From positions 1-64,000 of the IMG/VR virus record IMGVR_UViG_3300046660_000716: a DNA stretch of 64,000 nucleotides. One strand, given 5' to 3'. Below are positions 3,006 through 16,025 of this stretch, piece after piece. The translations under genes and the position numbers were made by a program. Each line of letters begins with the position of its first letter. Positions within the stretch are counted from its first letter, which is position 1. The notes under the pieces were generated by a model. That model saw only the letters and a program-made list of their open reading frames with translations, searched no databases and had not been told where the DNA came from.

Positions 3006-4415
3006 GTGAGAATCACACTGAACCCGCTCGACGAGGGCTTCGACCCGTTCTTCACCGTAACGGACCACTCGCCGGTGATCGAGAAGACCGGCAAGTTCTC
3101 GGACGGCGGCGTGTTCTCCGAGCGCATCTTCGGCCGCATCCCGTCGAGCGGCCGCGAGTACGCGTGCGACTGCCCGTCCACGCAGAAGCCCATCGAGGGC
3201 CGGTTCTACGAGGGCACGATCTGCCCCAAGTGCAACGCCGCCGTCACCTGCCGCGACACGGTGTTTTCCAAGAAGGGCTGGGTCGACCTGGGCGCGCACC
3301 AGATCATCAGCCCGCTCTTCTTCCAGTACTTCGCCAAGGTGGTCGGTCCGACCCAGCTGGCCAAGATCGTCCACCAGAAGCGCGTCCTGACCATGGACGG
3401 CATCATCAAGGTGGCGGACGACGCCGGACCGTTCGACAACATGGGCCTCGCCGAGTTCTCCCGGCGCTGGCCCGAGGTCCTGGACCACTTCGAGGCCAAG
3501 AAGAAGTCCGATCCGCGCGTCGCCGAGTTCGCCCGCATCATCCGCGAGAACCCGACGATGGTGATGACCTCCAAGATCCTGGTTTTCAACCACATCCTGC
3601 GCCCGGCGCTGGTCGTGGAGAAGCAGATGATCTTCGACGAGGTCAACAACCTGTACAACCTGCTGATCAGCAACGCGTCGGTGCTGAACGACTACACGCC
3701 GGAGGAGGCCACGGACGGCAACGTCAACGCGGTCCTGTGGCGCATCCAGGAGCGGGCGAACGAGATCTTCGACCACGTCCTGTTCGTGCTGTCCGGCAAG
3801 GGCGGCTACCTGCGCGGCCAGCTGCTCGGCAACCGCATCAACTTCTGCGGCCGCATGGTCATCACCCCGCTCGGCCCCGGCCACGAGCAGGACGAGGTCG
3901 AGGTCCCGTACCTGGCCTTCCTGGAGATGTACCGCTTCCAGCTGACCAACCTGACCGCCCGCATGAAGGGCATCTCGCTAGCGAAGGCCAACGACCTGTG
4001 GCACGAGGCCCAGACCAAGTTCGACCCGTCGATGTACGCGGCGATGCTCCAGCTGATCAAGCGCGGCCCGGACGGCCACGGCCTGTACGCGCTGCTGAAT
4101 CGCAACCCGACCATCGCGTTCGGCTCCATCCTGCGCGTGCGCATCACCGGCATCAAGCGCGACCCGCTCGACTACACGATGAGCGTGCACAACGGCATCC
4201 TGAAGCTGATCGGCGGCGACTACGACGGCGACGTCTGCGCCCTGATCCCGTTCCTGGACCGCGACTTCGCCGACGCCTTCCGCGTCTTCGACCCGCGCCT
4301 CATGATGATCTCGCGCGACGGCCCACGCGTCAACCGCGCCATGCTCATGGACAAGGACCACGTCCTGGGCCTGAGCGTGCTGACCGAGGACGATCCGCGC
4401 CTCATGGTCGCATAG
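3006..4415 (+). CDS. phage multisubunit RNA polymerase beta-prime subunit, N-terminal/catalytic part (split RNAP)
   Basis: GVFSERIFG, Zn finger CDC...CPKC, LSGKGGYLR, NRNPTI, catalytic GGDYDGD; ends shortly after the catalytic loop. Confidence 0.9.
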   Translation: MRITLNPLDEGFDPFFTVTDHSPVIEKTGKFSDGGVFSERIFGRIPSSGREYACDCPSTQKPIEGRFYEGTICPKCNAAVTCRDTVFSKKGWVDLGAHQIISPLFFQYFAKVVGPTQLAKIVHQKRVLTMDGIIKVADDAGPFDNMGLAEFSRRWPEVLDHFEAKKKSDPRVAEFARIIRENPTMVMTSKILVFNHILRPALVVEKQMIFDEVNNLYNLLISNASVLNDYTPEEATDGNVNAVLWRIQERANEIFDHVLFVLSGKGGYLRGQLLGNRINFCGRMVITPLGPGHEQDEVEVPYLAFLEMYRFQLTNLTARMKGISLAKANDLWHEAQTKFDPSMYAAMLQLIKRGPDGHGLYALLNRNPTIAFGSILRVRITGIKRDPLDYTMSVHNGILKLIGGDYDGDVCALIPFLDRDFADAFRVFDPRLMMISRDGPRVNRAMLMDKDHVLGLSVLTEDDPRLMVA

Positions 4416-4488: not shown

Positions 4489-4761
4489 ATGCTTTTCCTG
4501 AAAGTCATGTACGACGACGGGCTGCCCGACACGTCGCGCGCGAAGTCGTTCAAGGTCATCCAGCTGGAGGACGACCTGCTGGTCGACTTCTTCAAGGAGT
4601 CGCCGGAGGTCCGCGGTCAGGGCGACTTCAACGAGAAGTACCTGCACACCGCCCGCGTCATGCGCGGCGGCGAGGTCGTCGAGCAGTTCGCCCTCAAGGG
4701 CACGGCGTACCTGATGACCGAGCGCGGCGCCACGATCGCCACCTACCAGCCGATCGGTTAA
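4489..4761 (+). CDS. hypothetical protein
   Basis: 90-aa ORF, AGGAG RBS, followed by terminator. Confidence 0.75.
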   Translation: MLFLKVMYDDGLPDTSRAKSFKVIQLEDDLLVDFFKESPEVRGQGDFNEKYLHTARVMRGGEVVEQFALKGTAYLMTERGATIATYQPIG

Positions 4762-4811: not shown

Positions 4812-5144
4812 ATGAACCAACTGAGCTTCAAATACGGTGCGTCGTTCAATGTTGACGTTGATGCGCCGGTAGATATCGGCTGCTGCACGTACGCGGGCGA
4901 CCCATGTACTCCCACTCTAGACTACGTCAGCGATAGCCAGAACGATCTGGAGCGAAACATTCGCAATGACGAAGGTCACATCGTCGTCAACGATCACCTC
5001 CTGATCGGTAAGTCGCTGCACGACTTCCGCGGTGGCCCGGTCGTCTCTGTGCTGATCGCAATCCCGGATCCGCTGGACGATCCGAAAACGGCGACTCCGA
5101 TCGCCGTGGTCTTCGAGAACCCAAAAATGCCGGCGGTGGTCTGA
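4812..5144 (+). CDS. hypothetical protein (paralog of next gene)
   Basis: shares F.YG..FN, H.LIGK, GG..VSV and P..VVF..P with 5145..5483. Confidence 0.65.
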   Translation: MNQLSFKYGASFNVDVDAPVDIGCCTYAGDPCTPTLDYVSDSQNDLERNIRNDEGHIVVNDHLLIGKSLHDFRGGPVVSVLIAIPDPLDDPKTATPIAVVFENPKMPAVV

Positions 5145-5483
5145 ATGGCTACCCTCCACACCTTCGCCTATGGCGTTACGTTCAATGGCATCGTTGCCCT
5201 GCCAGGTGGTCGCACCCTGCGCTTGGACACCCTCGGCGAATCCGTCGACATGGTGAGCTACGTCGGCAACGACATCTTCAAGATCAAGGCGTTCCTGCTG
5301 GACCTCGTGCGCCCGCACACCGCACGCGCGCTGCAGTTCATCGATGAAGGCCACGAACTGATCGGCAAGCCCATGCTCAACATCGGCGGTGAGATCGTGT
5401 CCGTGATGCTGAAGACCGGCGAGTCCGAGCCCGTCCTGGTTGTGTTCCGCGAACCCACTCGCCTTAAGGGCGCCATCGAGTAG
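5145..5483 (+). CDS. hypothetical protein (paralog of previous gene)
   Basis: abuts previous stop; shared motifs. Confidence 0.7.
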   Translation: MATLHTFAYGVTFNGIVALPGGRTLRLDTLGESVDMVSYVGNDIFKIKAFLLDLVRPHTARALQFIDEGHELIGKPMLNIGGEIVSVMLKTGESEPVLVVFREPTRLKGAIE

Positions 5484-5656: not shown

Positions 5657-6187
5657 ATGCTCAGAAAACTCATCGCTGCCGCTCTGTCCGCAGCCCTGCT
5701 GGCCGCGCTACCCGCGCTGGCCCAAACCCTGACGTCCGAGGGCTCACCGGCCGCGCGCAACTGCCTGGTTGCCGCCGCCTGGATCGAGGCCCGCGGCCGA
5801 CCCGCCATAGAGGCGGAGGCCGTCATGCACGTCATCGTGAACCGCTCGAACCATCCGGCGTACGGAGGCACGGCCTGCGACGTGGTGCTGGCCAAGGGTC
5901 AGTTCCAGATGGTGCCCGCCGTCCGGTCAGCGCTCAGGCGCGTCCGCGACGGAACCGCGCCCGTGACGGTCATGTCCAAGAAACACGACGACCCGGAGAT
6001 CGCCCGGCTGATCGAGTGCGCGGAGCGCGTGCTCGAAGGCGGCGACGACCCGACGCACGGCGCCACGCACTTCTACTCGCCCAAGCTCCGCATAGCGATG
6101 AACCTGGACCGCGTCCCCTACTGGGCGCGCAGGATGCCGCTGACGGCCTCGCTCGGCGAGTTCCGCTTCCACCGCCTCCGGTCCTAG
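5657..6187 (+). CDS. SleB-like cell wall hydrolase (Hydrolase_2) with signal peptide
   Basis: WIEARG, AVMHVIVNR, VVLAKGQF, DPTHGATHFY, PYWA motifs; N-terminal signal peptide. Confidence 0.85.
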   Translation: MLRKLIAAALSAALLAALPALAQTLTSEGSPAARNCLVAAAWIEARGRPAIEAEAVMHVIVNRSNHPAYGGTACDVVLAKGQFQMVPAVRSALRRVRDGTAPVTVMSKKHDDPEIARLIECAERVLEGGDDPTHGATHFYSPKLRIAMNLDRVPYWARRMPLTASLGEFRFHRLRS

Positions 6188-6290: not shown

Positions 6291-7220
6291 ATGACGATGC
6301 CAACAGCAACGACCGACAACTTCGTCGGTCTCTTCGGTCGCCAGGCCCCGATCGGCCTCGACATACCGCAGTGGGTCACCGTGTACGTGCCGCACGGCGC
6401 GTGGCAGAAGCAGGAGGTCGGCGGGACCGTCGGCGGTTTCATGGCGGTCCTGGTGGAGGGCCTGGCGGTGATCGGGCTCACCGGGGTCACGATCGTCATC
6501 GACGAGAACGTGAAGACCTGGTCCATGCACAGCCTGAACGACCTCGGGGCCACGCTCAAGGGCGCGGTCGCGCCGAGCCGGCCCTACTTCCGGATCATCG
6601 TCTCCAACGTGGCGGCGGCCCTCGAGAACGACGGGGCGACCATGAGCGGCCCTCTGCTCGTCGTCACCAACGGCGAGGCGGTCGCCGTGCCGGAGGCGGT
6701 GCTGAGGGGCGGCGACGCGATCTGCGTGGACGTCGCCACCACGATGGTCGCCAAGACCACGCACCCGTACGAGCTGTCGAAGGACGCCATTCAGGAGCTG
6801 GGCGTCAAGGACCTGTACAAGCAGCCGCAGTGGGCCGAGAAGTGGTCGCGGACCGTCCTGCGCTCGACCACCGCCCTGATGGCGCTGAACGTCCTGGCCA
6901 AGCCCGAGCGCTTCGGCATGAACCGCTTCTTCTTCGCCTGCGACTTCCTCGACGAGACGATCATGCAGGCCGTCAACGCGCGGGGTGTTCGCCCTCGCTT
7001 CCGCGACGAAAAGAAGACGCGAACCAAGAAAACGAAAGACGCAGCTGCTGTTCAGCCCGATCCACCGACCGACGGCCCCGCTCCCGCGTCGGCCGCTGGC
7101 ATGGGCGAGGCGATCCTGGAGGCGGCATCCGTCGTCTTCGGAACCGACCACGTGCGCCAGACGGCCGACTTCCTCCAGATGTTCGCCGACCAGATCAACA
7201 CGCAACCGCAATTCGCATAA
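6291..7220 (+). CDS. hypothetical protein, first gene of the putative Ubl-system operon
   Basis: 309 aa, AAGGAG RBS, 9-nt gap to the next gene. Confidence 0.75.
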   Translation: MTMPTATTDNFVGLFGRQAPIGLDIPQWVTVYVPHGAWQKQEVGGTVGGFMAVLVEGLAVIGLTGVTIVIDENVKTWSMHSLNDLGATLKGAVAPSRPYFRIIVSNVAAALENDGATMSGPLLVVTNGEAVAVPEAVLRGGDAICVDVATTMVAKTTHPYELSKDAIQELGVKDLYKQPQWAEKWSRTVLRSTTALMALNVLAKPERFGMNRFFFACDFLDETIMQAVNARGVRPRFRDEKKTRTKKTKDAAAVQPDPPTDGPAPASAAGMGEAILEAASVVFGTDHVRQTADFLQMFADQINTQPQFA

Positions 7221-7229
7221 GGAACCACC

Positions 7230-9155
7230 ATGGAAGAGACCCAAGCACCGGCAGCACCGCCTCGACGCGCCAGCAGCCCGGTAGTAGCTCCGGTCAGGGA
7301 CCGGCCCGCCGGATCGAGCACGCTGCGCTCCCTGCGCGAGCTCTCGCCGGAGGCGGTGGCGGAGCTGAATAAGGCGCCGTCCATCCCGACGTACATGTAC
7401 GTCGACGTCTCCACCTGGTACGTGGCAGACCAGAAGGGCATCCCGATCAAGGCCATTGAGGTCAGCAGTGTCCCGACCGGCTACGCGCGCACCATGTACA
7501 TCTCCTGGCTGAGCGAGCAGCGCTCGTTCTGCTGGCGGGGTATGCGATATGTGTACTCATGCCACCCGGACGAGCACCCTGGTGAGGACGACGTAATCGT
7601 CGACCGCAGCTACCAGTTCCCCCATCTGAGCGACAAAGATCCGAGCGCCATCGACATCCCGATCCTCCACGCCCTGCACTACCTGCTGAGCGGCCATTCG
7701 ACCCAGGTCACGGTGGACGCCTACGCGCTGGGCGTGGACCCGCTCGCCGCGATCCGCGACTGGTCGGCCGACAAGGTCGCTGCGTTCGGCCAGTGGGCCG
7801 TGTACATCCGCGGCTCCGTGACCGCCACGACCTTCACCGTGCTGGAGATGGCGTCGCTCTACGAGTCCGAGACCGAGGGCATCCTGCGCGGACGCCTCGA
7901 CTGGGTGCGCTTCCCGGACGGCGACGGCTGCGGCAACGTCCTCGCGGTCAGCGAGCTCAGCTACGTCGGCGAGGACTTCGAGGACGAGCTTGGCGTGCCG
8001 CACTGGCGGGTCGGCGACGAGTGGACGGCCAACGTCATGGACCGCGACGGCATACTGCACGCCCACGTGGACGTCAAGAACTTCGGCGTTGTGCCACGAT
8101 CCCGCGCCCACAAGCTCATGGAGCTCGCGGCCAAGATGAGCGGTGCGGTCGTCTCCAAGCTGAATCTGGCCTCGGGCGGCAACACGTTCGCGGACATCGA
8201 GGGCTTCTCGATGGAATCGCTCGACCAGATGATCGCGTTCATCGGCAGCGACTCGGTGGACAGCCTCGTCACCTGGGAGCAGCTGAAGCGAGGCCACACG
8301 CACATCAACCAGGTGCCGATCAGCACAACGATCGGCTACGAGGTGAGCCACTGGGTGGACGCAGCGCTGAGCAAGCTCGTGTGGGCCGGCGCCGCAGAGA
8401 TCACGTCCGCCCTGCGCACAGGCCGCGAGATCAGCATGGACACAATCGACATAAGCGACTTCGCGAAGATCGAGTTCCCGCAGAACGACCTGATCGAGTC
8501 CATCAAGATGCTCAAGGGCGGCACCGTGCGCGTGATCCTGAAGGACGTGGTCTACCCGACCCAGGTCCTGCGCCGCGGCATCACCTACATCGAGGACGAC
8601 GCGGGTTCGGTGCTGAGCGACATGTCCATCAGGGCGTTCGACCTGGACTTCCGCGGCAACCTGACCAAGTTCCCGAACGCCACGGCGTACGCCGACGAGG
8701 CGTGCAAGCACATCGCGCGTCACACCAACATCTCCAGCGGCGGTCGCGTGTGCCTGGGCAACATCAACCAGGGTATGACCGAGGCCGAGATCGCCGCGCG
8801 CGGCGGCTTCGGCATGCCGTCCGTGGGGGACTTCCTGCAGATGCTCCGCCAGTGCAACCTGGACAGCGCGTACCACGGGGGCCGCGAGTTCGTCCTGGCC
8901 GACCCGGAATCGGTCGAGCAGGGCCACTACTCGAACGCGCCGAAGTGGCGCATCCCCGGCCTGCGCCGCATCGAGGTCGACGACTTCGCGGAGCTGCGCA
9001 AGCAGTTCGCAGCCCAGGCCGCCGCTGAGGCGGAGGAAGACGGCGAGGAGGCCGACCCGATCGCCGAGGGCGCCGCCGATGCCGAACCGGCGACGGAGGC
9101 CGAGCCGGAAACTACCGAAGAACCAACAGAGGAGGCCGCAGATGCCGATAACTAG
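7230..9155 (+). CDS. large protein with C-terminal prokaryotic E2 (ubiquitin-conjugating)-like domain
   Basis: HTNISSGGRVCLGN (8721-8762) matches the E2 HPNxxxxGxICL active-site pattern; adjacent ThiF gene; acidic tail. Confidence 0.7.
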   Translation: MEETQAPAAPPRRASSPVVAPVRDRPAGSSTLRSLRELSPEAVAELNKAPSIPTYMYVDVSTWYVADQKGIPIKAIEVSSVPTGYARTMYISWLSEQRSFCWRGMRYVYSCHPDEHPGEDDVIVDRSYQFPHLSDKDPSAIDIPILHALHYLLSGHSTQVTVDAYALGVDPLAAIRDWSADKVAAFGQWAVYIRGSVTATTFTVLEMASLYESETEGILRGRLDWVRFPDGDGCGNVLAVSELSYVGEDFEDELGVPHWRVGDEWTANVMDRDGILHAHVDVKNFGVVPRSRAHKLMELAAKMSGAVVSKLNLASGGNTFADIEGFSMESLDQMIAFIGSDSVDSLVTWEQLKRGHTHINQVPISTTIGYEVSHWVDAALSKLVWAGAAEITSALRTGREISMDTIDISDFAKIEFPQNDLIESIKMLKGGTVRVILKDVVYPTQVLRRGITYIEDDAGSVLSDMSIRAFDLDFRGNLTKFPNATAYADEACKHIARHTNISSGGRVCLGNINQGMTEAEIAARGGFGMPSVGDFLQMLRQCNLDSAYHGGREFVLADPESVEQGHYSNAPKWRIPGLRRIEVDDFAELRKQFAAQAAAEAEEDGEEADPIAEGAADAEPATEAEPETTEEPTEEAADADN

Positions 9156-9813
9156 AGCAGAGGTGGGTCGCCTCGAAATGCGACCCATCATGGCCAACAC
9201 CATGCGACGCCGCCTCAACCTGCTGGGAGTGGGCGGCGTCGGCAGCAACTTCATGCGGCTGATGTGCCACCACGAGGACGAGGTCATGGTCCGCATCTTC
9301 GACATGGACACGGTCGAGCTGCACAACCTGAACCGCGCGAGCATGTTCACGATCGACGACGCGTTCAGCAACGCGAGCAAGGTGAGCGCGATCGCTGCGT
9401 CGTGCAAGCGGCTCGCCAGCGAGCTGTCCGTTACCCCGAGCAACGCCGAGATCGACAGGGACACGGTGCTGCCCAAGGGCTTGGTGATCGACGCGCGGGA
9501 CACGCTGAACCCGACCAAGATCCCGGCGGCGACCTGGCTGAAGCTGGCCTACGACGGCGGCAGCGAGATGAGCTTCACCTGGCTGCCGCACATCGTCTCG
9601 AAACACGTCGTCGACCTGAGCAACGGTCGCAGCAACGCGTACGCCGTCGTGCCGAGCTTCTACGTGCCGGCGGCGCTGCTGTCCATCCTGGCCATGCGGT
9701 TCATGCAGTTCGAGAACTTCCTGGAGATCACCGAGATGCGCGCCGGCACCTTCCACATGAACCTTGACGAGATGGTCGACTCCGTCTCATACGAATGGGA
9801 GCCACCGCAATGA
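9142..9813 (+). CDS. ThiF/MoeB/E1-like adenylyltransferase
   Basis: LLGVGGVGS nucleotide-binding loop, FDMDTVELHNLNR, SKV, VIDARD; GAGGAGG RBS; overlaps end of the E2-like gene. Confidence 0.88.
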   Translation: MPITRAEVGRLEMRPIMANTMRRRLNLLGVGGVGSNFMRLMCHHEDEVMVRIFDMDTVELHNLNRASMFTIDDAFSNASKVSAIAASCKRLASELSVTPSNAEIDRDTVLPKGLVIDARDTLNPTKIPAATWLKLAYDGGSEMSFTWLPHIVSKHVVDLSNGRSNAYAVVPSFYVPAALLSILAMRFMQFENFLEITEMRAGTFHMNLDEMVDSVSYEWEPPQ

Positions 9814-10712
9814 GCGACACGCGCATCGAAATCGACCCAAGCACGGCGCGAGTCAGGTCCGTGACGTACCAGGACGTGACTGGCGAGATGATCACCGTCA
9901 CCGAAGGAGCGGTGGCGCCGGCCTTCGAGAACATCGCGTCGGCGCATCGCCACCACGCGCATTCCGATGTCGCCGACATGGCGACCCAGACCATGGCTGA
10001 GATCGAAGCGGCCATCGGCGAGCCGCCGATCATCTCGATCCAAGCTCCGGTGACCGAGGACGTGATGGTGCCGGAGGAGGACACGGCCGAAGTGCAGACC
10101 GTTCTACGCTTCCTCGAGGACGACTCGATCGACATGAAGCGCACCGTGGGCAAGATCCGCTCCCTGCCGCCGGAGCGCGTCCGCGACGCGCTCTCCGTGG
10201 CCTACGCCGACATCATCGGCGGCCGAGCCGGTCCTGCCCCGAGCATCGCCCGCGCTCTGCACATGGTGGTCTCGCCGTTCCTGACCGCGCTGCCGGGCCT
10301 GGTCCGCGACCACGGACCGCAGAACGAGCAGCTGCGCCGCCTCACCGCCGAGATCCTGGTGATCCTCAAGGGCGTGTACGTGGCCGAGTCCAAGTCGCGC
10401 AATAACACGCTGATCATCCGCCCCCTGCGCGGATCCGTCACGGGCCGCGACCTGACGCCGATGCAGCTGCTGCAGATGCAGCTCAAGATGTCGGCGACCC
10501 TGGAGCGCGAGCTGGCGGAGCTCGCCAGCAACGGCGGCTTCTGGAGCGTATTCATGAACGCCCACCAGTACCGCCAGATGGCGCTGCACTCCCCGGTCAA
10601 CCTGATCAACACCATCGCGGAGATGGGAACTTACCTCAAGGCTGTCTCGTTCAAGACCAAATTGGACAATCAACAGCTTAAGATTCTTCAGGCGTTCTTC
10701 CGTACTGCCTGA
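9810..10712 (+). CDS. hypothetical alpha-helical protein in the Ubl cluster
   Basis: ATGA overlap with the E1-like gene; ~300 aa. Confidence 0.75.
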   Translation: MSDTRIEIDPSTARVRSVTYQDVTGEMITVTEGAVAPAFENIASAHRHHAHSDVADMATQTMAEIEAAIGEPPIISIQAPVTEDVMVPEEDTAEVQTVLRFLEDDSIDMKRTVGKIRSLPPERVRDALSVAYADIIGGRAGPAPSIARALHMVVSPFLTALPGLVRDHGPQNEQLRRLTAEILVILKGVYVAESKSRNNTLIIRPLRGSVTGRDLTPMQLLQMQLKMSATLERELAELASNGGFWSVFMNAHQYRQMALHSPVNLINTIAEMGTYLKAVSFKTKLDNQQLKILQAFFRTA

Positions 10713-10745
10713 AGCACCAGCAACAATCCCACTCACTACGATTGA

Positions 10746-10765
10746 CGGGGCCGTGCACGGCCCCG
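10746..10765. promoter_or_regulatory. perfect 20-bp palindrome just upstream of an RBS
   Basis: CGGGGCCGTGCACGGCCCCG. Confidence 0.55.
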
Positions 10766-10781
10766 CTTGAAAGGAATCACA

Positions 10782-11522
10782 ATGGCAACAGCTACTCCAC
10801 GCGGCGCATCCTCCATCCCTGACCTGGAATTCCTGAAGGCGTACAACGACCCGAAGGCATCCAACGCCCAGATCCTGGAGGCCCTGCAAACCGACTGGAC
10901 TGCCGTGGGCGTCAAGCTGCGCTCCGCACGTCTGCAGCTGCACACCCTGGTGACCCGCACCGGCGGCGCCAAGGGTACCGCCGAAGCGAAGGACAAGGAC
11001 GACCTGGCGCTGGAAGCCCAGATCTTCAAGAAGCACGAGATCGTGCAGCCGCAGCCGAACGGCCCCTACATCTCGCTGCAAGAGCGCATCGACGCGGGCA
11101 AGATCAAGGTCAACTCCAAGCTGGAAGTGACCGAGCTGGAATCCAAGGGCGAGACCGCCAAGCCGGCCGCGAAGGCCGACGCCCCGGCCAAGGGCAAAGC
11201 TGACGCCAAGGCAGACAAGGCGAAGCCCGCCGACAAGGCCAAGGACTCGGGCAAGGCCGCCGCGGAAGAGCCAGCCAAGCCGACCAAGACCAAGGTAGCC
11301 GCCGATCCGCGCGCCTTCGTGTTCCAGGCCAACATCTTCAGCACGAACTACGAGTTCGCCGGCGCGTCGAAGAACGACGCCACCAACGCCCTCTTCACCA
11401 AGCTGCAAGAGCTGAACGTTAGCAAGGTCCAGATCTCCGACAACAACGGCCGCAGCTGCGGCTTCGCCGACATCGTGCACGGCGGCAAGTACAAGTTCAG
11501 CAAGCAGCTGACCGCGGCGTAA
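10782..11522 (+). CDS. candidate ubiquitin-like modifier: N-terminal domain, Lys/Ala-rich linker, C-terminal putative beta-grasp domain
   Basis: AAGGA RBS; last ~70 aa read as beta-beta-alpha-beta-beta-beta ending SKQLTAA; lies between the E1-like and JAB genes. CDS is solid, function is inferred. Confidence 0.5.
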   Translation: MATATPRGASSIPDLEFLKAYNDPKASNAQILEALQTDWTAVGVKLRSARLQLHTLVTRTGGAKGTAEAKDKDDLALEAQIFKKHEIVQPQPNGPYISLQERIDAGKIKVNSKLEVTELESKGETAKPAAKADAPAKGKADAKADKAKPADKAKDSGKAAAEEPAKPTKTKVAADPRAFVFQANIFSTNYEFAGASKNDATNALFTKLQELNVSKVQISDNNGRSCGFADIVHGGKYKFSKQLTAA

Positions 11523-11539
11523 AGGCGCGCCGGAAGGTA

Positions 11540-11563
11540 GCGATGGACCCGAGGGTCCATCGC
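11540..11563 (+). promoter_or_regulatory. stem-loop without U-tract after the Ubl candidate gene
   Basis: GCGATGGACCC-GA-GGGTCCATCGC. Confidence 0.5.
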
Positions 11564-11592
11564 GTCTAGACGAACACAAAGAAGGGTAAAGA

Positions 11593-12483
11593 ATGCGCAA
11601 CGATCACCTCATCAGCACGGGCCTGCAGCTTCACAGCAAGGCGTTCGTCGTGATGCCGCAGGACATCTGCCGCACCATGGCCGCGGCTCTGTCCGCCATC
11701 CCCGACCCGAGCCTCGAGTACGGCATGTACCTGAAGGGCGACTGGGATCCGAAGACCTGCACCGTCATCGTTCGCCCCGGCGAATTCTATGTACCGGAGC
11801 AGGTCGTGAGCGGCGCCTCCATCCAGTTCACCGAGGAGCCGCCCGGCCCGGAGTGGAACGTGGTCATCCACCGTCACCCGCCGGGCGTGAACCGCTTCTC
11901 CAGCACCGACGAGAACTCGATCAACGAGGAGTTCCTCGCCTCGGTCCTGTTCATGCCGCCGTGGGGCTTCCCCGACGCCGTGGTCAACATCCCGCTGGCG
12001 CCAGGCTCCAAGTTCCAGACCCGCGCCGTTGTCAATCCCGAGGGCACGCTGCTGGACATGCCAGAGGAGCTGACCGCCAAGATCAAGGCCAACGTCAAGC
12101 GCTACACGGCTCCGAAGGTCGAGAAGATGGGCGCCGGCCACGTCACCACCCTGGGACCGGACGAGCGCGCGTCCCTCCAGCGCGAGCTCGGCGAGAGCGG
12201 CCTGGATTTCGACAATGGTGGCTACGGACGTCCGCTGCCCGGCGTGGGCACCGGTAAGATCGGTCAGGCCCGCCAGGTGGCCGGCGGCGGCACCATCCGC
12301 GCGCTGGGCTACGAGCCTGACAAGGTCCGCCCGCGCATCCAGCCGATCCGCGGCGGCAAGGCCAAGCCGGGTCCGCTCAACGGCGACGCCGCCGGACTGG
12401 TGGCCGCAGGCTTCCACGCCTCCGACATCGAGGACATCGCCGACGCGCAGCGCGAGAGCCAGATGATCCGCGTGCAGGGCTAA
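11593..12483 (+). CDS. JAB/MPN+ (JAMM) metalloprotease
   Basis: upstream Glu in LEYGMYL and HRHPPGVNRFSSTD = HxH-x7-S-x2-D; low-complexity C-terminal half. Confidence 0.85.
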   Translation: MRNDHLISTGLQLHSKAFVVMPQDICRTMAAALSAIPDPSLEYGMYLKGDWDPKTCTVIVRPGEFYVPEQVVSGASIQFTEEPPGPEWNVVIHRHPPGVNRFSSTDENSINEEFLASVLFMPPWGFPDAVVNIPLAPGSKFQTRAVVNPEGTLLDMPEELTAKIKANVKRYTAPKVEKMGAGHVTTLGPDERASLQRELGESGLDFDNGGYGRPLPGVGTGKIGQARQVAGGGTIRALGYEPDKVRPRIQPIRGGKAKPGPLNGDAAGLVAAGFHASDIEDIADAQRESQMIRVQG

Positions 12484-12504
12484 CCACAACTACAAGGGAA
12501 TACA

Positions 12505-13245
12505 GTGGACAAAATCAAGAAGGTCAAGCTCTTCATGGGCTTGGGGGTGGCCGCGCTGCTGATACTCATCGGCCCGCTGCTTTGGATGCTGCTGCAGGCC
12601 GGGCTCGCTCTGAGCCTGGTCGGCGCGCTCGGCGTCGCCATGGCCGGGGCCATCCGACTGCTGCCGCTGGCCGGGCAGAAGCTGGAGAATAAGATCCTCG
12701 AACTGCGCAAGGCCGAGGCTCGCAAGAACCCGATCGAGCAGAAGCAGAACGAACTCCTGCGCCGCCGCAAGCAGATCGAGATGGCCAAGAAGGCGCTCGT
12801 CGGCGCCGGCTCCCAGATCGAGGGCATGGAGGACATGATCCGCGAGCAGGCCAGGAAGGACCCGGACTGCGACATGTCGCAGGAGCGCCGCGGCCTCGAG
12901 AAGATGAAGGCGTTCTACCAGGGCAACCTGGAGAAGCTGCGCTACCGCGAGGGTAAGATCGCCGAGTTCGCCAAGAACATCGAGCGCGACATCTTCAAGT
13001 GGGAATTCACCCAGAAGGGCAAGGCCACCATCGAGGGACTGAACGTTAACGACCAGGAATCCGTGCTGAACGAGATCCTGACCAGCGAGGCCAACCGCGC
13101 CGTCAACGACGAATTCAACCAGATCTGCGCCGAGATGGACATGGAAGTCAGCACCATGAACGCCCAAGGCGTGATCACTTACGAGGGCGGCCTGACGCTG
13201 GACATGACCGGCTACAAGGTGCCCGAAATGGCGAAGGTGAACTGA
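12505..13245 (+). CDS. membrane-anchored coiled-coil protein (possibly PspA-like)
   Basis: GTG start; two N-terminal hydrophobic helices then long charged helical region. Confidence 0.6.
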   Translation: MDKIKKVKLFMGLGVAALLILIGPLLWMLLQAGLALSLVGALGVAMAGAIRLLPLAGQKLENKILELRKAEARKNPIEQKQNELLRRRKQIEMAKKALVGAGSQIEGMEDMIREQARKDPDCDMSQERRGLEKMKAFYQGNLEKLRYREGKIAEFAKNIERDIFKWEFTQKGKATIEGLNVNDQESVLNEILTSEANRAVNDEFNQICAEMDMEVSTMNAQGVITYEGGLTLDMTGYKVPEMAKVN

Positions 13246-13246
13246 C

Positions 13247-13396
13247 ATGAACTACTGGAAGATCCTCAAGATCGCCGCGCCCATCCTGGTCGTGATCATC
13301 ACCGCCGTCGTCTGCGCCTTGGGTCAGCCCTCGTCGCCGGCCGACGCCCCGGCACCGGCTACCCAGCCGGCCGCCGGCCCCAACTACAACCTGTGA
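13247..13396 (+). CDS. small single-TM protein
   Basis: MNYWKILKIAAPILVVIITAVVCALGQPSSP...NYNL; fills the gap between neighbours. Confidence 0.6.
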   Translation: MNYWKILKIAAPILVVIITAVVCALGQPSSPADAPAPATQPAAGPNYNL

Positions 13397-13419
13397 CACC
13401 AACGATGAAGGACAGCACC

Positions 13420-14409
13420 ATGAACGTGATGCAACCGAAGTACATCAAGGGCCTGCTGGCCGCCATGCTGGTCATGATGGTTTCCGCCTTCGCCCACGCC
13501 GCGCCGGAAGAGGGCGGCCCGGCCGCCTCCTGCGGCGAGGACGCGCTGGAGATCGCCACCGGCGCCAAGGGCAAGGGCTACTCCCTGCTGTACGCGAACC
13601 TGGAGAAGGTCTGCGGCCAGGTCGTCCCGATGTGCGAGCACCCGACCAACGGCGGCCTGGACAACGTGAACGCGCTGTCCGTCAAGGAAGCCGACCTGGG
13701 CTTCGCCCAGTTGGACACCGCGAGCAGCATGAAGAGCGACGAGAACATCGCCGCCCTGGTCTCCGTGGCCACGCTGAACACGAACTTCATGCACACCGTC
13801 GTGTCGAGCTCCGGCTTCAACGTGCCCGGTCCGAAGAAGTGGGGCGGCATGAAGGACGGCGACCCGATCCAGGTGCAGCTGCGCTCCTTCTCCGACCTGA
13901 AGGGCCGCACGATCGGCGCCGTCGGCTCGGCCGACCTGCTGATCCGCCAGCTGAACAAGCAGCTGGGCTACAACATGACCATCCGCGGCTTCAAGAGCGA
14001 CGCCGACGCGATCCAGGCCATGAAGAACCCGGCCAACATCGTGGCCTTCGTGACGGTCAGCGGATGGCCGCACGGCGCCCTGAAGAACCTGACGCCGGAC
14101 AGCGGCCTGACCCTGGCGAGCTTCGACGCGGTCGTGGCCGCCCCGTACATCGTCAAGCCGCTGAACTACCGCAGCATGGCCGTGTACAACAGCAACACGC
14201 TGGGCGTGCCCAACCTGCTGCTGGCCCGCCAGTTCACGGGCGAGAAGGCCGCCCAGGTCAGCAAGCTGCGCGCCTGCATGGCCTCCAGCCTGACCAAGCT
14301 CCAGCAGGGCAAGTTCGAGCCGGGCTGGAACGAGATGAAGAGCCTGGACGGCGCCAACGACTGGCCGAAGTTCGTGCCGTCGTCGGCCGCCGCGCCGCGC
14401 AAGAAGTAA
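13420..14409 (+). CDS. TAXI-family TRAP-type periplasmic solute-binding-like protein
   Basis: signal peptide; IATGAKGKGY, TNGGLDNVNAL, ADLGFAQLD, SFSDLKGRTI. Confidence 0.8.
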   Translation: MNVMQPKYIKGLLAAMLVMMVSAFAHAAPEEGGPAASCGEDALEIATGAKGKGYSLLYANLEKVCGQVVPMCEHPTNGGLDNVNALSVKEADLGFAQLDTASSMKSDENIAALVSVATLNTNFMHTVVSSSGFNVPGPKKWGGMKDGDPIQVQLRSFSDLKGRTIGAVGSADLLIRQLNKQLGYNMTIRGFKSDADAIQAMKNPANIVAFVTVSGWPHGALKNLTPDSGLTLASFDAVVAAPYIVKPLNYRSMAVYNSNTLGVPNLLLARQFTGEKAAQVSKLRACMASSLTKLQQGKFEPGWNEMKSLDGANDWPKFVPSSAAAPRKK

Positions 14410-14717: not shown

Positions 14718-16025
14718 ATGGCATTCAAAGACGTCACAATCTCCCGGCCCGTGTCCGTAGTGGCACCGGTCATCAGCAGCCTCGCGGGAGCCCTGCGCCG
14801 GTACGTCATGAGCGTGCTGCCGACCGAGTACGTGAGGGACTACTTCATCGACACGGAGCTTCCGATCGTGCGCTTCCAGCAGCGCCGCAAGTTCCGGCCG
14901 ATGATGCACTCGCAGCTGGACATTCGCAAGCTGCCGCTCCTGAGCATCAAGGTGGACTCGACGGCCGACCCATCGCCGTTCGCCACCGGCACGACGTTCT
15001 GGACCAGCACCCGCTTCCTGGACGACCCGACCCGGCTGGCCCGCCTGATCGTCGACGACGACAACCTGCGCTACGTCGGATACGAGACCGAGCGCATGGT
15101 CATGCGGTTCCAGGTGTCGTTCACCGTGGAGACTGACCTCAAGGCCGCCGAGCTGATGATGTACCTGCGCCGCAGCCTGCCGATCGACCAGAAGGTGTAC
15201 CTTAACGACGTGGACGTCGCCACCGAGGTGCCGATGGACGTGCTGCGCCCGATCTGGACCGACATGGGGCTGGGCGACGGCACGGACCCCGACGACGTGG
15301 CGGAATTCCGCGAGTACCTGACGGCCTCGACCGCCGGCCTGGTGGAGCAGGTGACGAGCTCCTCGACGGGCCGCCTCGTCTTCGCCTTCCACTACCGGGC
15401 GAACCCGATCGTCAACATCACCTCGGTCCCTTCCATGACGCCCATCCGGGACGGCAACGTCGTGACGAAGGCGCAGGTCGACATCCCGTTCGAGATGGAC
15501 GTCATGGTGCCGGTGGCGTACGCGCTGCGCCAGGAGCAGTCCCTGGGGTCGGTCACCCCCATAAACCCCACGCCGTTCGACATCGGCGACGAGGGCGCGG
15601 GGGCGTACTACAGCGCCCAGCACCGGACGCGCCCGCCGCAGACCGTGGCGGACAACCTGACGCTCGTCTACTTCACCGCGGTCGTGACGGCCGACGTGGA
15701 TCCCGCCCGCCCGGGCGCCCCCGACGTGACGGACCTGTCCACGTCCGTGGACGGCAGGATGCGGGCGTACATCCACGCCCTCCTGTCGGGCGGAGCACAG
15801 GACAAGGTCGAGGCCAAGCTCTGGCTGGACGGCGACGAGATCGGGGCCGGGTGGGAGTTCGACCCGGCCACGTGGGCGCTGACCATCGACAAGGTGGCGT
15901 TCCAGCCGCGCCAGAAGTACCACTTTGGACTGTACACCGACCTGTCCCGCCTCGACGAGCTCGCGCCGGTCGTCCGCAGGCCGCAGGCCCCGAGCCCCAC
16001 GTTCAAGCGCATCAACACCGTGTAG
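14718..16025 (+). CDS. hypothetical protein, probably virion structural
   Basis: 435 aa, beta-rich, phage-typical codon use, near structural genes. Confidence 0.6.
   Translation: MAFKDVTISRPVSVVAPVISSLAGALRRYVMSVLPTEYVRDYFIDTELPIVRFQQRRKFRPMMHSQLDIRKLPLLSIKVDSTADPSPFATGTTFWTSTRFLDDPTRLARLIVDDDNLRYVGYETERMVMRFQVSFTVETDLKAAELMMYLRRSLPIDQKVYLNDVDVATEVPMDVLRPIWTDMGLGDGTDPDDVAEFREYLTASTAGLVEQVTSSSTGRLVFAFHYRANPIVNITSVPSMTPIRDGNVVTKAQVDIPFEMDVMVPVAYALRQEQSLGSVTPINPTPFDIGDEGAGAYYSAQHRTRPPQTVADNLTLVYFTAVVTADVDPARPGAPDVTDLSTSVDGRMRAYIHALLSGGAQDKVEAKLWLDGDEIGAGWEFDPATWALTIDKVAFQPRQKYHFGLYTDLSRLDELAPVVRRPQAPSPTFKRINTV

What the first reader, a model, noticed from the sequence alone, without database searches (positions are those of the whole stretch)
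9142..9813. E1-like enzyme lacks Zn-binding CxxC pairs and a crossover-loop catalytic Cys
Seen: only two Cys (LMCHH, ASCKR), both in the N-terminal Rossmann half; the segment where MoeB/E1 enzymes carry the thioester Cys reads GRSNAYAVVPSFY. Inference: the Ubl-adenylate may be attacked directly by the E2 Cys, skipping the E1 thioester, or another nucleophile such as Tyr or Ser is used. The E2/E1 gene overlap suggests a stoichiometric complex.
Basis: partly seen in the sequence, partly recalled or inferred. Interest (0 to 1): 0.6.

Follow-up and report, generated by a model that had tools for sequence, protein, structure and literature searches.

The report
Cysteine-free E1 enzyme in jumbo phage
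An uncultured giant phage carries its own ubiquitin-like protein-tagging genes, and its activating enzyme (E1) has no conserved cysteine and no zinc site, only one invariant tyrosine where other E1s hold their catalytic residue, so it must hand on its cargo by an unusual route.

Summary
Window 9142-9813 encodes a 223-aa E1/ThiF-fold adenylating enzyme. It has two Cys (C42, C88), neither conserved. None of 69 homologs has a CxxC motif, and three have no Cys at all. All ATP/Mg residues are invariant, so the enzyme looks active.

[quoted passage not shown] It lies nine residues before the Pro of the following helix, the same spacing as the catalytic Tyr of bacterial Bub E1s.

The gene sits in a module conserved in six jumbo-phage contigs:
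- a 641-aa protein with a C-terminal UBC-type E2 domain (H498-x-N…C508);
- the E1, usually overlapping the E2 gene;
- an unknown protein;
- a 251-aa protein with an invariant KQLTAA end, often followed by variable extensions;
- a JAB peptidase.

Best reading: a phage-encoded conjugation pathway in which E1 adenylates the KQLTAA protein, holds it on Tyr167 as an oxyester, and passes it to E2 Cys508. Direct attack by the E2 Cys on the adenylate is the main rival, and computation cannot separate the two. I rate it a new variant of a known kind. No close relative was found in cultured phages or in 185,579 prokaryote genomes.

The parts
6291..7220 (+). Conserved 309-aa protein of unknown function, the first gene of the module
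   Evidence: Homologs sit directly upstream of the E2-like gene in L002, L006, L007 and L009. No Pfam, PHROG, NCBIfam or PADLOC hit.
7230..9155 (+). 641-aa protein. The N-terminal ~400 aa are variable and of unknown function; the C-terminal part is a UBC-type E2 domain (residues ~398-580, nt 8421-8969).
   Evidence: 20 homologs, with the C-terminal 200 aa highly conserved. AF2 model of residues 398-600 has pLDDT 83. All top-50 Foldseek hits are E2 enzymes, but with weak E-values of 0.01-0.2. VIA Z 6.2-7.7, about 120 residues aligned, rmsd 3.3-3.6 A. Atlas structure hits are UQ_con, Prok-E2_B, Prok-E2_D and E2-CBASS.
8721..8753 (+). E2 active-site motif H498-T-N-I-S-S-G-G-R-V-C508
   Evidence: H498, T499, N500, I501, G505, V507, C508, L509 and G510 are invariant in 20 sequences. 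Translation verified. The His-to-Cys spacing of 10 matches the HPN...C of canonical UBC enzymes (own knowledge).
9129..9135 (+). Ribosome-binding site GAGGAGG for the E1 gene, inside the 3' end of the E2-like gene
9142..9813 (+). E1-like adenylating enzyme, 223 aa, with no Zn site and no conserved Cys (the finding)
9226..9243 (+). Nucleotide-binding Gly loop G29-V-G-G-V-G34
   Evidence: G29, G31, G32 and G34 are invariant.
9301..9336 (+). D54-x-D56 ... N62-L-N64-R65 ATP/Arg motif of E1 enzymes
   Evidence: Invariant in 69 of 69. Aligns with the DFD...SNLQRQ motif of MoeB and ThiF in hhalign.
9490..9501 (+). D117-A-R-D120, the Mg/adenylate Asp motif
   Evidence: D117, R119 and D120 are invariant in 69 of 69. 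hhalign places the motif opposite ThiF D-C-T-D.
9583..9660 (+). Crossover-loop equivalent, residues 148-173, with no Cys; Tyr167 is at nt 9640-9642
   Evidence: Y167 is present in 67 of 67 informative sequences, while loop positions 150-166 are 17-80% conserved (most below 65%) and the loop varies in length. AF2 pLDDT is below 50 at 166-169.
9265..9267 (+). Cys42, not conserved
   Evidence: Cys in 24 of 69 homologs.
9403..9405 (+). Cys88, not conserved
   Evidence: Cys in 8 of 69 homologs.
9795..10712 (+). 305-aa protein of unknown function, overlapping the E1 3' end. Only the C-terminal ~190 aa are conserved.
   Evidence: No family hit.
10767..11522 (+). 251-aa candidate modifier or substrate: a conserved N-terminal domain, a low-complexity linker, and a ~70-aa C-terminal domain ending in the invariant K-Q-L-T-A-A (nt 11502-11519)
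   Evidence: 46 homologs keep the motif. 13 end exactly at A-A; the rest carry extensions of 12-54 aa of at least two unrelated kinds. The fold was not established.
11593..12483 (+). JAB/JAMM metallopeptidase, 296 aa, with E42 and H93-x-H95 ... S103-x-x-D106
   Evidence: The motif residues are invariant in 5 loci. Prok-JAB is hit by 4 of 5 members, best E 8.6e-05. Translation verified.

Best explanation
The ORF is a minimal, stand-alone E1-type adenylating enzyme of an uncultured clade of jumbo phages. It belongs to a phage-encoded ubiquitin-like conjugation module: an E2-domain protein, the E1, an unknown protein, a 251-aa protein ending in KQLTAA, and a JAB peptidase.

Proposed mechanism:
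1. Where the 251-aa protein carries a C-terminal extension, JAB trims it to expose the terminal Ala. In this window the protein already ends at Ala-Ala.
2. E1 binds ATP-Mg and adenylates that C-terminal Ala.
3. E1 has no cysteine to use, so the invariant Tyr167 on the flexible crossover segment attacks the adenylate and forms a tyrosyl oxyester, as in bacterial Bub E1s.
4. The cargo passes to Cys508 of the E2 domain as a thioester.
5. From there it goes to a still unknown target, and JAB can also reverse that conjugation.

What is shown: the E1 fold and an intact adenylation site, the absence of Cys and Zn in the whole family, the invariance and position of Tyr167, the E2-like fold and motif, the JAB motif, the conserved C-terminus of the 251-aa protein, and the conserved gene order. 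What is inferred: every chemical step, the identity of the cargo, and the physical E1-E2 contact.
For: - E1 fold and active site: Pfam ThiF above its cut-off. AF2 pLDDT 89.5. Foldseek E about 1e-9 to UBA5, MoeB, Cap2, MccB and ThiF. VIA Z 16-18. The G-loop, D54, D56, N62, N64, R65, D117, R119 and D120 are invariant in 69 sequences.
- No thiol route: no conserved Cys, no CxxC, and three Cys-free members.
- Tyr167: 67 of 67, in a low-confidence, length-variable loop.
- Comparison with Bub E1s: BubCD-like proteins were fetched from four genomes. The invariant Bub Tyr (ORF position 389 in L100, close to Citrobacter Y370 after the roughly 18-residue offset) lies 9 residues before the Pro of Q-P-A-V that starts the next helix. 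Tyr167 lies 9 residues before P176 of V-P-A-A. hhalign pairs exactly those helices: FMQFENFL with CMAFNDFL, and PAA with PAV.
- Published chemistry: Bub E1 forms a Ubl~Tyr oxyester (10.1101/2024.11.21.623953).
- E2: invariant H-T-N ... C508, and only UBC-fold matches.
- Cargo: invariant KQLTAA, either terminal or followed by unrelated extensions. A C-terminal Ala is an accepted E1 substrate end in Cap2 systems.
- JAB motif intact.
- Module order is conserved in L002, L004, L006, L007 and L009. E2/E1 overlaps of 4-14 nt occur in 4 of 5 loci.
Against: - No experiment exists, and no residue-level structural superposition of Tyr167 on a catalytic residue could be made with these tools.
- The helix register with Bub is not significant by sequence alone (hhalign P 0.46).
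- Tyr167 is also the first residue of a conserved Y-x-V-V-P-S-F-Y-V-P motif, so its invariance could be structural or could serve tail binding.
- The E1 is no closer to Bub E1s (hhalign E 1.4e-10) than to MoeB (1.8e-9) or ThiF (1.4e-8), so the Tyr may be convergent.
- The E2 here uses Cys, unlike the Ser of Bub.
- The fold of the 251-aa protein's C-terminal domain is unknown.
- S172 and Y137 are also invariant and were not excluded as nucleophiles.
Confidence: 0.45

Rival explanations
1. Direct hand-off. E1 only adenylates the cargo, and Cys508 of the tightly bound E2 domain attacks the acyl-adenylate in the E1 active site. There is no covalent E1 intermediate, and Tyr167 only shapes the loop or binds the cargo tail.
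For: Cap2 with its E1 Cys mutated (C548A) still forms conjugates in vitro because the neighbouring E2 Cys can act in its place (10.1101/2022.03.31.486616). The E2 and E1 genes overlap or abut in the same E2-then-E1 order as the Cap2 domains. E2 Cys508 is invariant.
Against: This reading does not explain why Tyr167 alone is invariant in an otherwise variable, flexible loop, at the Bub catalytic spacing. A thiolate acceptor does not need an E1 residue, yet families without one (such as MoeB, by own knowledge) do not fix a loop residue.
Confidence: 0.3
2. This is not a conjugation E1. The enzyme adenylates a C-terminus for other chemistry, as MccB, PaaA, AclA or ThiF do (cyclisation, amidation, sulfur transfer), and the E2-like and JAB neighbours serve another purpose.
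For: Structural matches to MccB, PaaA and AclA are as good as those to true E1s. These enzymes need no catalytic Cys (review PMC12596934, listed; its text was not read).
Against: The E1 is tightly linked to a UBC-type domain with an invariant HxN...Cys and to a JAB peptidase in all six loci, which is the signature of conjugation systems (PMC1779556). There are no sulfur-transfer or RiPP tailoring genes in the module.
Confidence: 0.08
3. The protein is a degenerate or scaffolding pseudo-E1 that has lost catalysis along with its Cys and Zn sites.
For: Loss of Cys and Zn together could suggest decay.
Against: Every nucleotide- and Mg-binding residue is invariant across 69 sequences down to 26% identity. 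The fold is predicted with high confidence.
Confidence: 0.03
4. One of the two Cys (C42 or C88) is the thioester site after all.
For: None beyond their presence in this one sequence.
Against: They are present in only 24 and 8 of 69 homologs. Three homologs have no Cys at all. Both lie on Rossmann-half helices rather than on the crossover segment.
Confidence: 0.01

Closest known systems
Bub (6E/DUF6527) pathway E1s, BubCD and BubBD (Ye et al., bioRxiv 10.1101/2024.11.21.623953; PDB 9ea4, 9ea5, 9eae, 9eav)
   Same: The E1 has no crossover-loop Cys. A single invariant Tyr lies in that loop, 9 residues before the Pro that opens the next helix. Similar fold: VIA Z 16.5 over 200 residues aligned to 9eav. 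A JAB peptidase processes a pro-form of the cargo.
   Different: The Bub E2 uses Ser (with His/Asp or Lys/His); the phage E2 keeps HxN...Cys. Bub E1s are fused to JAB or to E2, while this one stands alone. There is no DUF6527/BubE protease in the phage genome. There is no special sequence kinship. Bub is bacterial and presumed to act in defence; this module is phage-borne.
Type II CBASS Cap2/Cap3 (Ledvina et al. 2023; PDB 7to3, 7tqd, 7tsq)
   Same: The E2-then-E1 order, a JAB partner, a cargo that need not be a beta-grasp Ubl and can end in Ala, and an E1 Cys that is dispensable in vitro. PADLOC E1-E2 models hit the Rossmann half weakly, E 6e-05.
   Different: Cap2 is one polypeptide with a linker domain and a crossover-loop Cys (C548). 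Here there are two genes, no Cys and no CD-NTase. The E2 domain is closer to the canonical UBC type with HxN.
BilABCD (Chambers et al. 2024; 10.1101/2023.09.26.559546)
   Same: The Ubl / E2 / JAB / E1 gene set. JAB exposes the reactive C-terminus. There is no E3.
   Different: BilD has tandem IAD-AAD domains, a mobile CYS domain (C417) and a four-Cys Zn site. None of these is present here.
MoeB/ThiF sulfur-carrier adenylyltransferases
   Same: The size (about 220-250 aa), the single adenylation domain, the fold (Z about 17), and the ATP motifs, which align.
   Different: MoeB has two CxxC pairs and C187. Its partners end in Gly-Gly. The NCBIfam ThiF and MoeB equivalog scores lie far below their cut-offs (40.8 against 275 bits).
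UBA5 (minimal homodimeric E1 for UFM1)
   Same: Best Foldseek match (6h78, E 2e-9). Its catalytic residue sits at the C-terminal end of the crossover loop, next to the following helix.
   Different: UBA5 uses Cys250, and it has a C-terminal UFM1/UFC1-binding tail.

Membership tests
E1-like / ThiF adenylation-domain superfamily | Rossmann-type GxGxxG nucleotide loop | tested here: met
   G29, G31, G32 and G34 are invariant.
E1-like / ThiF adenylation-domain superfamily | Conserved Asp, Asn-x-Asn-Arg and Asp motifs for ATP-Mg and the Arg finger | tested here: met
   D54, D56, N62, N64, R65, D117, R119 and D120 are invariant in 69 of 69. They align with the MoeB and ThiF motifs.
E1-like / ThiF adenylation-domain superfamily | Family model above its curated threshold, and a fold match | tested here: met
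   PF00899 scores 47.5 bits against a cut-off of 28.1. Foldseek E about 1e-9. VIA Z 16-18.
Thioester-forming E1s (UBA1, UBA5, ATG7, Cap2, BilD) | Conserved catalytic Cys on the crossover loop or on an inserted CYS domain | tested here: not met
   No conserved Cys column in 69 sequences, three Cys-free members, and no insertion domain.
Thioester-forming E1s / MoeB-ThiF | Structural Zn bound by two CxxC pairs (present in many members but not all) | tested here: not met
   No CxxC in any of 69 sequences. MoeB, as a control, has CxxC at 172-175 and 244-247.
MoeB/ThiF sulfur-carrier adenylyltransferases | Equivalog-level sequence match and a ThiS/MoaD-type Gly-Gly partner | tested here: not met
   TIGR02356 scores 40.8 bits against a cut-off of 275. 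The candidate cargo ends in Ala-Ala and shows no similarity to ThiS.
Bub (6E/DUF6527) pathway | Invariant Tyr on the E1 crossover loop | tested here: met
   Y167 in 67 of 67, with the same 9-residue spacing to the helix Pro as in four fetched BubCD-like proteins. The register is only suggestive.
Bub (6E/DUF6527) pathway | E2 with a catalytic Ser instead of Cys | tested here: not met
   Invariant Cys508 ten residues after H498.
Bub (6E/DUF6527) pathway | BubE (DUF6527, PF20137) protease in the operon | tested here: not met
   No PF20137 match in the complete 259-kb genome. The control genome gave a match.
Bub (6E/DUF6527) pathway | E1 fused to a JAB or E2 domain | tested here: not met
   Stand-alone 223-aa protein. 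The family members are mostly 220-260 aa (up to 332 aa) and carry no JAB or E2 domain.
CBASS Cap2/Cap3 | Single E2-linker-E1 polypeptide next to a CD-NTase | tested here: not met
   The E2-domain protein and the E1 are separate, overlapping genes. No CD-NTase or other defence model was hit in the module.
CBASS Cap2/Cap3 | JAB (Cap3-like) peptidase partner | tested here: met
   JAMM motif intact. Prok-JAB is hit by 4 of 5 members.
UBC-fold E2 (for the upstream 641-aa protein) | UBC fold | tested here: inconclusive
   Every top structural hit is an E2 and the whole core is covered, but the scores are middling: Foldseek E 0.01-0.2, VIA Z up to 7.7. No Pfam hit above threshold.
UBC-fold E2 (for the upstream 641-aa protein) | HPN-type motif followed by the catalytic Cys | tested here: met
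   H498-T-N ... C508 is invariant in 20 sequences.
Ubiquitin-like beta-grasp modifiers (for the 251-aa protein) | Beta-grasp fold | tested here: inconclusive
   The Atlas structure search gave no named beta-grasp family. hhalign against ThiS found nothing.
Ubiquitin-like beta-grasp modifiers (for the 251-aa protein) | Conserved small-residue C-terminus, exposed directly or by peptidase cleavage of a variable extension | tested here: met
   KQLTAA in 46 homologs. 13 end at A-A; the others have unrelated extensions.

The most novel reading that the evidence does not exclude
Jumbo phages run their own ubiquitin-like conjugation pathway through a mixed relay not described so far. A Cys-free, Zn-free E1 holds the cargo as a tyrosyl oxyester (Tyr167) and passes it to a canonical HxN...Cys E2 thioester. 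The pathway thereby tags phage or host proteins with a ~25-kDa modifier, possibly not a beta-grasp protein, that ends in Ala-Ala.
Probability: 0.3. Interest if true: 0.8.

Novelty: new variant of a known kind. Interest (0 to 1): 0.62.

Why it matters
E1-E2-JAB conjugation systems in prokaryotes have so far been characterised as bacterial anti-phage defences (CBASS Cap2/3, Bil, Bub). In my literature searches I found no paper describing such a module on a jumbo phage, in particular one with a Cys-free E1.

If the module is active, phages also tag proteins covalently, possibly to remodel the host, to build virions or to counter defence.

Mechanistically it would be the second, independent case of an E1 working without cysteine. 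It would be the first pairing of a Tyr-type E1 with a thiol E2. That bears on how the thioester cascade evolved and on how much E1 chemistry can vary.

The system is small (a 223-aa E1, a ~200-aa E2 domain and a defined C-terminal motif), so it can be reconstituted directly in E. coli.

Tried and rejected
- Complex prediction (E1 x2, the E2 domain, ATP, and residues 176-251 of the 251-aa protein as partner) gave no verdict: scores 0.14 and 0.02 against a mark of 0.32. It counts neither for nor against binding.
- Residue-level mapping of the C-terminal half by sequence failed. hhalign of the family against E. coli MoeB and ThiF covers only residues 21-138. A profile of the C-terminal half found nothing relevant in the PDB. 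hhalign of that half against BubCD-like proteins was not significant.
- A PDB sequence search with the 641-aa family found nothing. With the JAB family it gave only chance hits.
- tblastn of the E1 and of the JAB against 50,697 phage records found no match, and megablast of 7000-13000 found none either.
- PADLOC hit nothing for the E2, JAB or cargo proteins.
- PRTRC cassette idea: the Atlas and BFVD showed PRTRC-type E2 and ThiF look-alikes, but no NCBIfam PRTRC model hit the E1 or the other module proteins. I dropped it.
- The 90-aa ORF 4489-4761, which ends in Gly, was considered as a Ubl. It is not conserved next to the module in related contigs, so I dropped it.
- AR9/PBS1 were checked for the module, because the flanking 435-aa gene has homologs there. 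It is absent.
- The read-mapping tools were not used.
- No alternative genetic code was used.
Full report
**Context.** The window is the first 64 kb of a complete 259,338-bp virus record with direct terminal repeats. GC is about 65%. It carries a split multisubunit RNA polymerase beta' gene of the phiKZ/AR9 kind at 3006-4415 (phrog_2987). It is therefore an uncultured jumbo phage. No cultured phage shares DNA with the region.

**The observation.** The ORF 9142-9813 (+) gives 223 aa with two Cys, C42 and C88, and the quoted stretch is residues 162-174. The 9142 start is right. A GAGGAGG site lies 6 nt upstream, and homologs begin with the same M-x-I-T-R-x-D-V. The public call from 9190 is probably short. 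The gene overlaps the stop of the upstream gene by 14 nt.

**The protein is an E1-type adenylating enzyme.**
- Pfam ThiF is above its threshold, although only for residues 24-108.
- The AF2 model is confident (pLDDT 89.5).
- Foldseek finds UBA5, MoeB, Cap2, MccB and ThiF at E about 1e-9.
- VIA-align gives Z 16.4-18.2 for dozens of E1s, with no subfamily standing out. BubCD 9eav scores Z 16.5.
- The Gly loop, D54/D56, N62-L-N64-R65 and D117-x-R119-D120 are invariant in all 69 family members, and hhalign pairs them with the MoeB and ThiF motifs.

The adenylation site looks intact.

**Cys and Zn are missing in the whole family.** Among 69 homologs (26-61% identity) the most frequent Cys column is C42, with 24 of 69. 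C88 has 8 of 69. No sequence has a CxxC, three sequences have no Cys at all, and only two have a stray Cys in the loop segment. E. coli MoeB, fetched as a control, shows CxxC at 172-175 and 244-247 plus C187.

**What is conserved instead.** In the segment between strand 142-147 and helix 174-187 the sequence and length vary. Conservation is 17-80% at positions 150-166, mostly below 65%. Tyr167 is present in every informative sequence (67 of 67). AF2 confidence drops below 50 exactly at 166-169.

The Bub paper reports the same pattern. BubCD has no crossover-loop Cys, its only invariant loop residue is Y370 within a disordered stretch, and it forms a Ubl~Tyr oxyester (10.1101/2024.11.21.623953).

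I fetched four BubCD-like JAB-E1 fusions from genomes that carry DUF6527. Their invariant Tyr is at ORF position 389 in L100, which corresponds to Citrobacter Y370 after the offset seen in the Rossmann match. It lies nine residues before the Pro of Q-P-A-V that opens the next helix. Tyr167 lies nine residues before P176 of V-P-A-A. The only register hhalign finds for these helices pairs FMQFENFL with CMAFNDFL and PAA with PAV. An ungapped back-extension from that register puts Tyr167 on the Bub Tyr. MoeB C187 is eight residues before its P195.

This register is not significant by sequence alone (P 0.46), so I treat it as suggestive. The family is not measurably closer to Bub E1s than to MoeB or ThiF.

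**Neighbourhood.** Six contigs (the window, L002, L004, L006, L007, L009) share the following gene order, next to the RNAP beta' gene:
- a 309-aa protein;
- the E2-domain protein;
- the E1;
- a variable unknown protein;
- a 251-aa protein;
- the JAB peptidase;
- a 435-aa protein.

Two window genes, 12505-13245 and 13393-14409, are insertions that the relatives lack.

*E2-domain protein.* The 641-aa protein has a variable N-terminal 400 aa and a highly conserved C-terminal domain with invariant H498-T-N-I...G-x-V-C508-L-G. Its AF2 model (pLDDT 83) matches only UBC E2 enzymes. The scores are middling: Foldseek E 0.01-0.2, and VIA Z up to 7.7 with about 120 of 150 residues aligned. The Atlas look-alikes are UQ_con, Prok-E2_B, Prok-E2_D and E2-CBASS. 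The His-to-Cys spacing of ten equals that of canonical UBCs (own knowledge).

*JAB.* The JAB protein keeps E42, H93-x-H95, S103 and D106, and 4 of 5 members hit Prok-JAB.

*Candidate cargo.* The 251-aa protein is the best cargo candidate. 46 homologs keep K-Q-L-T-A-A. Thirteen end exactly there, and the rest continue with 12-54 residues of at least two unrelated kinds. A conserved end that is either terminal or followed by variable extensions is the usual mark of a modifier exposed by a peptidase. A C-terminal Ala is an accepted end in Cap2 systems. Its fold is not established.

*Gene overlap.* E2/E1 overlaps of 14, 4, 11 and 8 nt occur in four of five loci, and one locus has a 27-nt gap. This fits translational coupling. 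It does not prove a complex.

**Mechanism.** The E1 is active-looking but has no thiol, the E2 keeps its thiol, and a JAB and a cargo with a fixed C-terminus are present. The module is therefore most likely a conjugation pathway.

For the step after adenylation I favour a Tyr167 oxyester followed by transfer to Cys508. The reasons are the invariance, the flexibility and the Bub-like position of the Tyr. The main rival is direct attack of Cys508 on the adenylate, for which Cap2 C548A is a precedent. Non-conjugating adenylate chemistry of the MccB/PaaA type and a dead scaffold are unlikely, given the neighbours and the intact ATP site.

**Distribution and novelty.** All 69 homologs come from metagenomes, several on contigs of 230-260 kb. 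A pattern scan of 185,579 species genomes found only generic ThiF relatives, at most 35% identity to any substantial part of the Rossmann half. IMG/VR gave one more locus. Phage records gave none. Other phage-borne E1-fold proteins exist (crAss001, Acinetobacter phage ME3, a PRTRC-type ThiF) but share only 11-15% identity. Literature searches found no description of a jumbo-phage E1-E2-JAB module.

I therefore rate it a new variant of a known kind. The parts are Cap2/Cap3-like in layout and Bub-like in the E1 loop, the E2 motif is canonical, and the module sits on a phage.

**Limits.**
- No residue-level structural superposition and no distances could be obtained.
- The one complex prediction gave no verdict.
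- The targets and the biological role are unknown.

Noticed in passing
window 13393-14409 (+) and 12505-13245 (+): There are two genes between the JAB gene and the conserved 435-aa gene that the related contigs lack. One is a 338-aa protein with a hydrophobic N-terminus and an NMT1/TctC-like solute-binding domain (PF16868, 8e-07), which is unusual cargo for a phage. The other is a 246-aa phrog_27316 protein.
   Followed up: partly
window 9190 versus 9142: The public gene call for the E1 starts at 9190 (207 aa). The conserved N-terminus and a GAGGAGG site support 9142, which adds a conserved N-terminal helix (M-x-I-T-R-x-D-V). By analogy with MoeB, this helix may reach into the partner subunit's ATP site.
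   Followed up: partly
window 14718-16025 (+): The 435-aa protein (phrog_21946) that closes the conserved block has distant homologs (about 23% identity over 94% of its length) only in the Bacillus jumbo phages AR9, PBS1, Goe21, Internexus and BpSp. This ties the clade to the AR9-like lineage. AR9 lacks the E1-E2-JAB genes at that place.
   Followed up: yes
window 4489-4761, 4812-5144, 5145-5483 (+): Three small adjacent ORFs of 90, 110 and 112 aa. The first hits phrog_10337 and ends in Gly. The last two end in similar V-V-F-x-x-P stretches and may be paralogs. They are not conserved next to the module in related contigs.
   Followed up: partly
window 5657-6187 (+): A SleB-type cell-wall hydrolase (PF07486, 5e-14) with a signal-like N-terminus. 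It is conserved upstream of the module in L002 and L009.
   Followed up: no
contig holding P0068 (ENA ERZ27295583, 228,973 bp; no DNA available): This distant jumbo-phage contig carries two ThiF-like genes about 5 kb apart (241 aa and 332 aa), each preceded by a protein of about 480-550 aa. Some phages therefore seem to have two such modules. A NADAR-domain gene lies between them.
   Followed up: no
P0135 (homolog of window 10767-11522): One 175-aa homolog of the KQLTAA protein has an N-terminus that hits FAD/NAD oxidoreductase Pfam families. It is probably a chimeric or misassembled short contig (843 bp).
   Followed up: no
L011-L088 (genome-contig hits such as L015, L018, L051): Many Sphingobacterium and Chryseobacterium genomes hold a ThiF-like gene matching residues 7-159 of the phage E1 at 24-28% identity. 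This is a bacterial E1-like family whose context I did not examine.
   Followed up: no
L100, L101, L104 (G257, G055, G234): 8 of 401 sampled genomes in the class of G001 matched DUF6527 (7 above the family's cut-off). Three of the six regions fetched encode JAB-E1 fusions with the conserved G-Y-L-A-x-V-x-E-D-Q-P-A-V motif. They served here as Bub comparators.
   Followed up: partly
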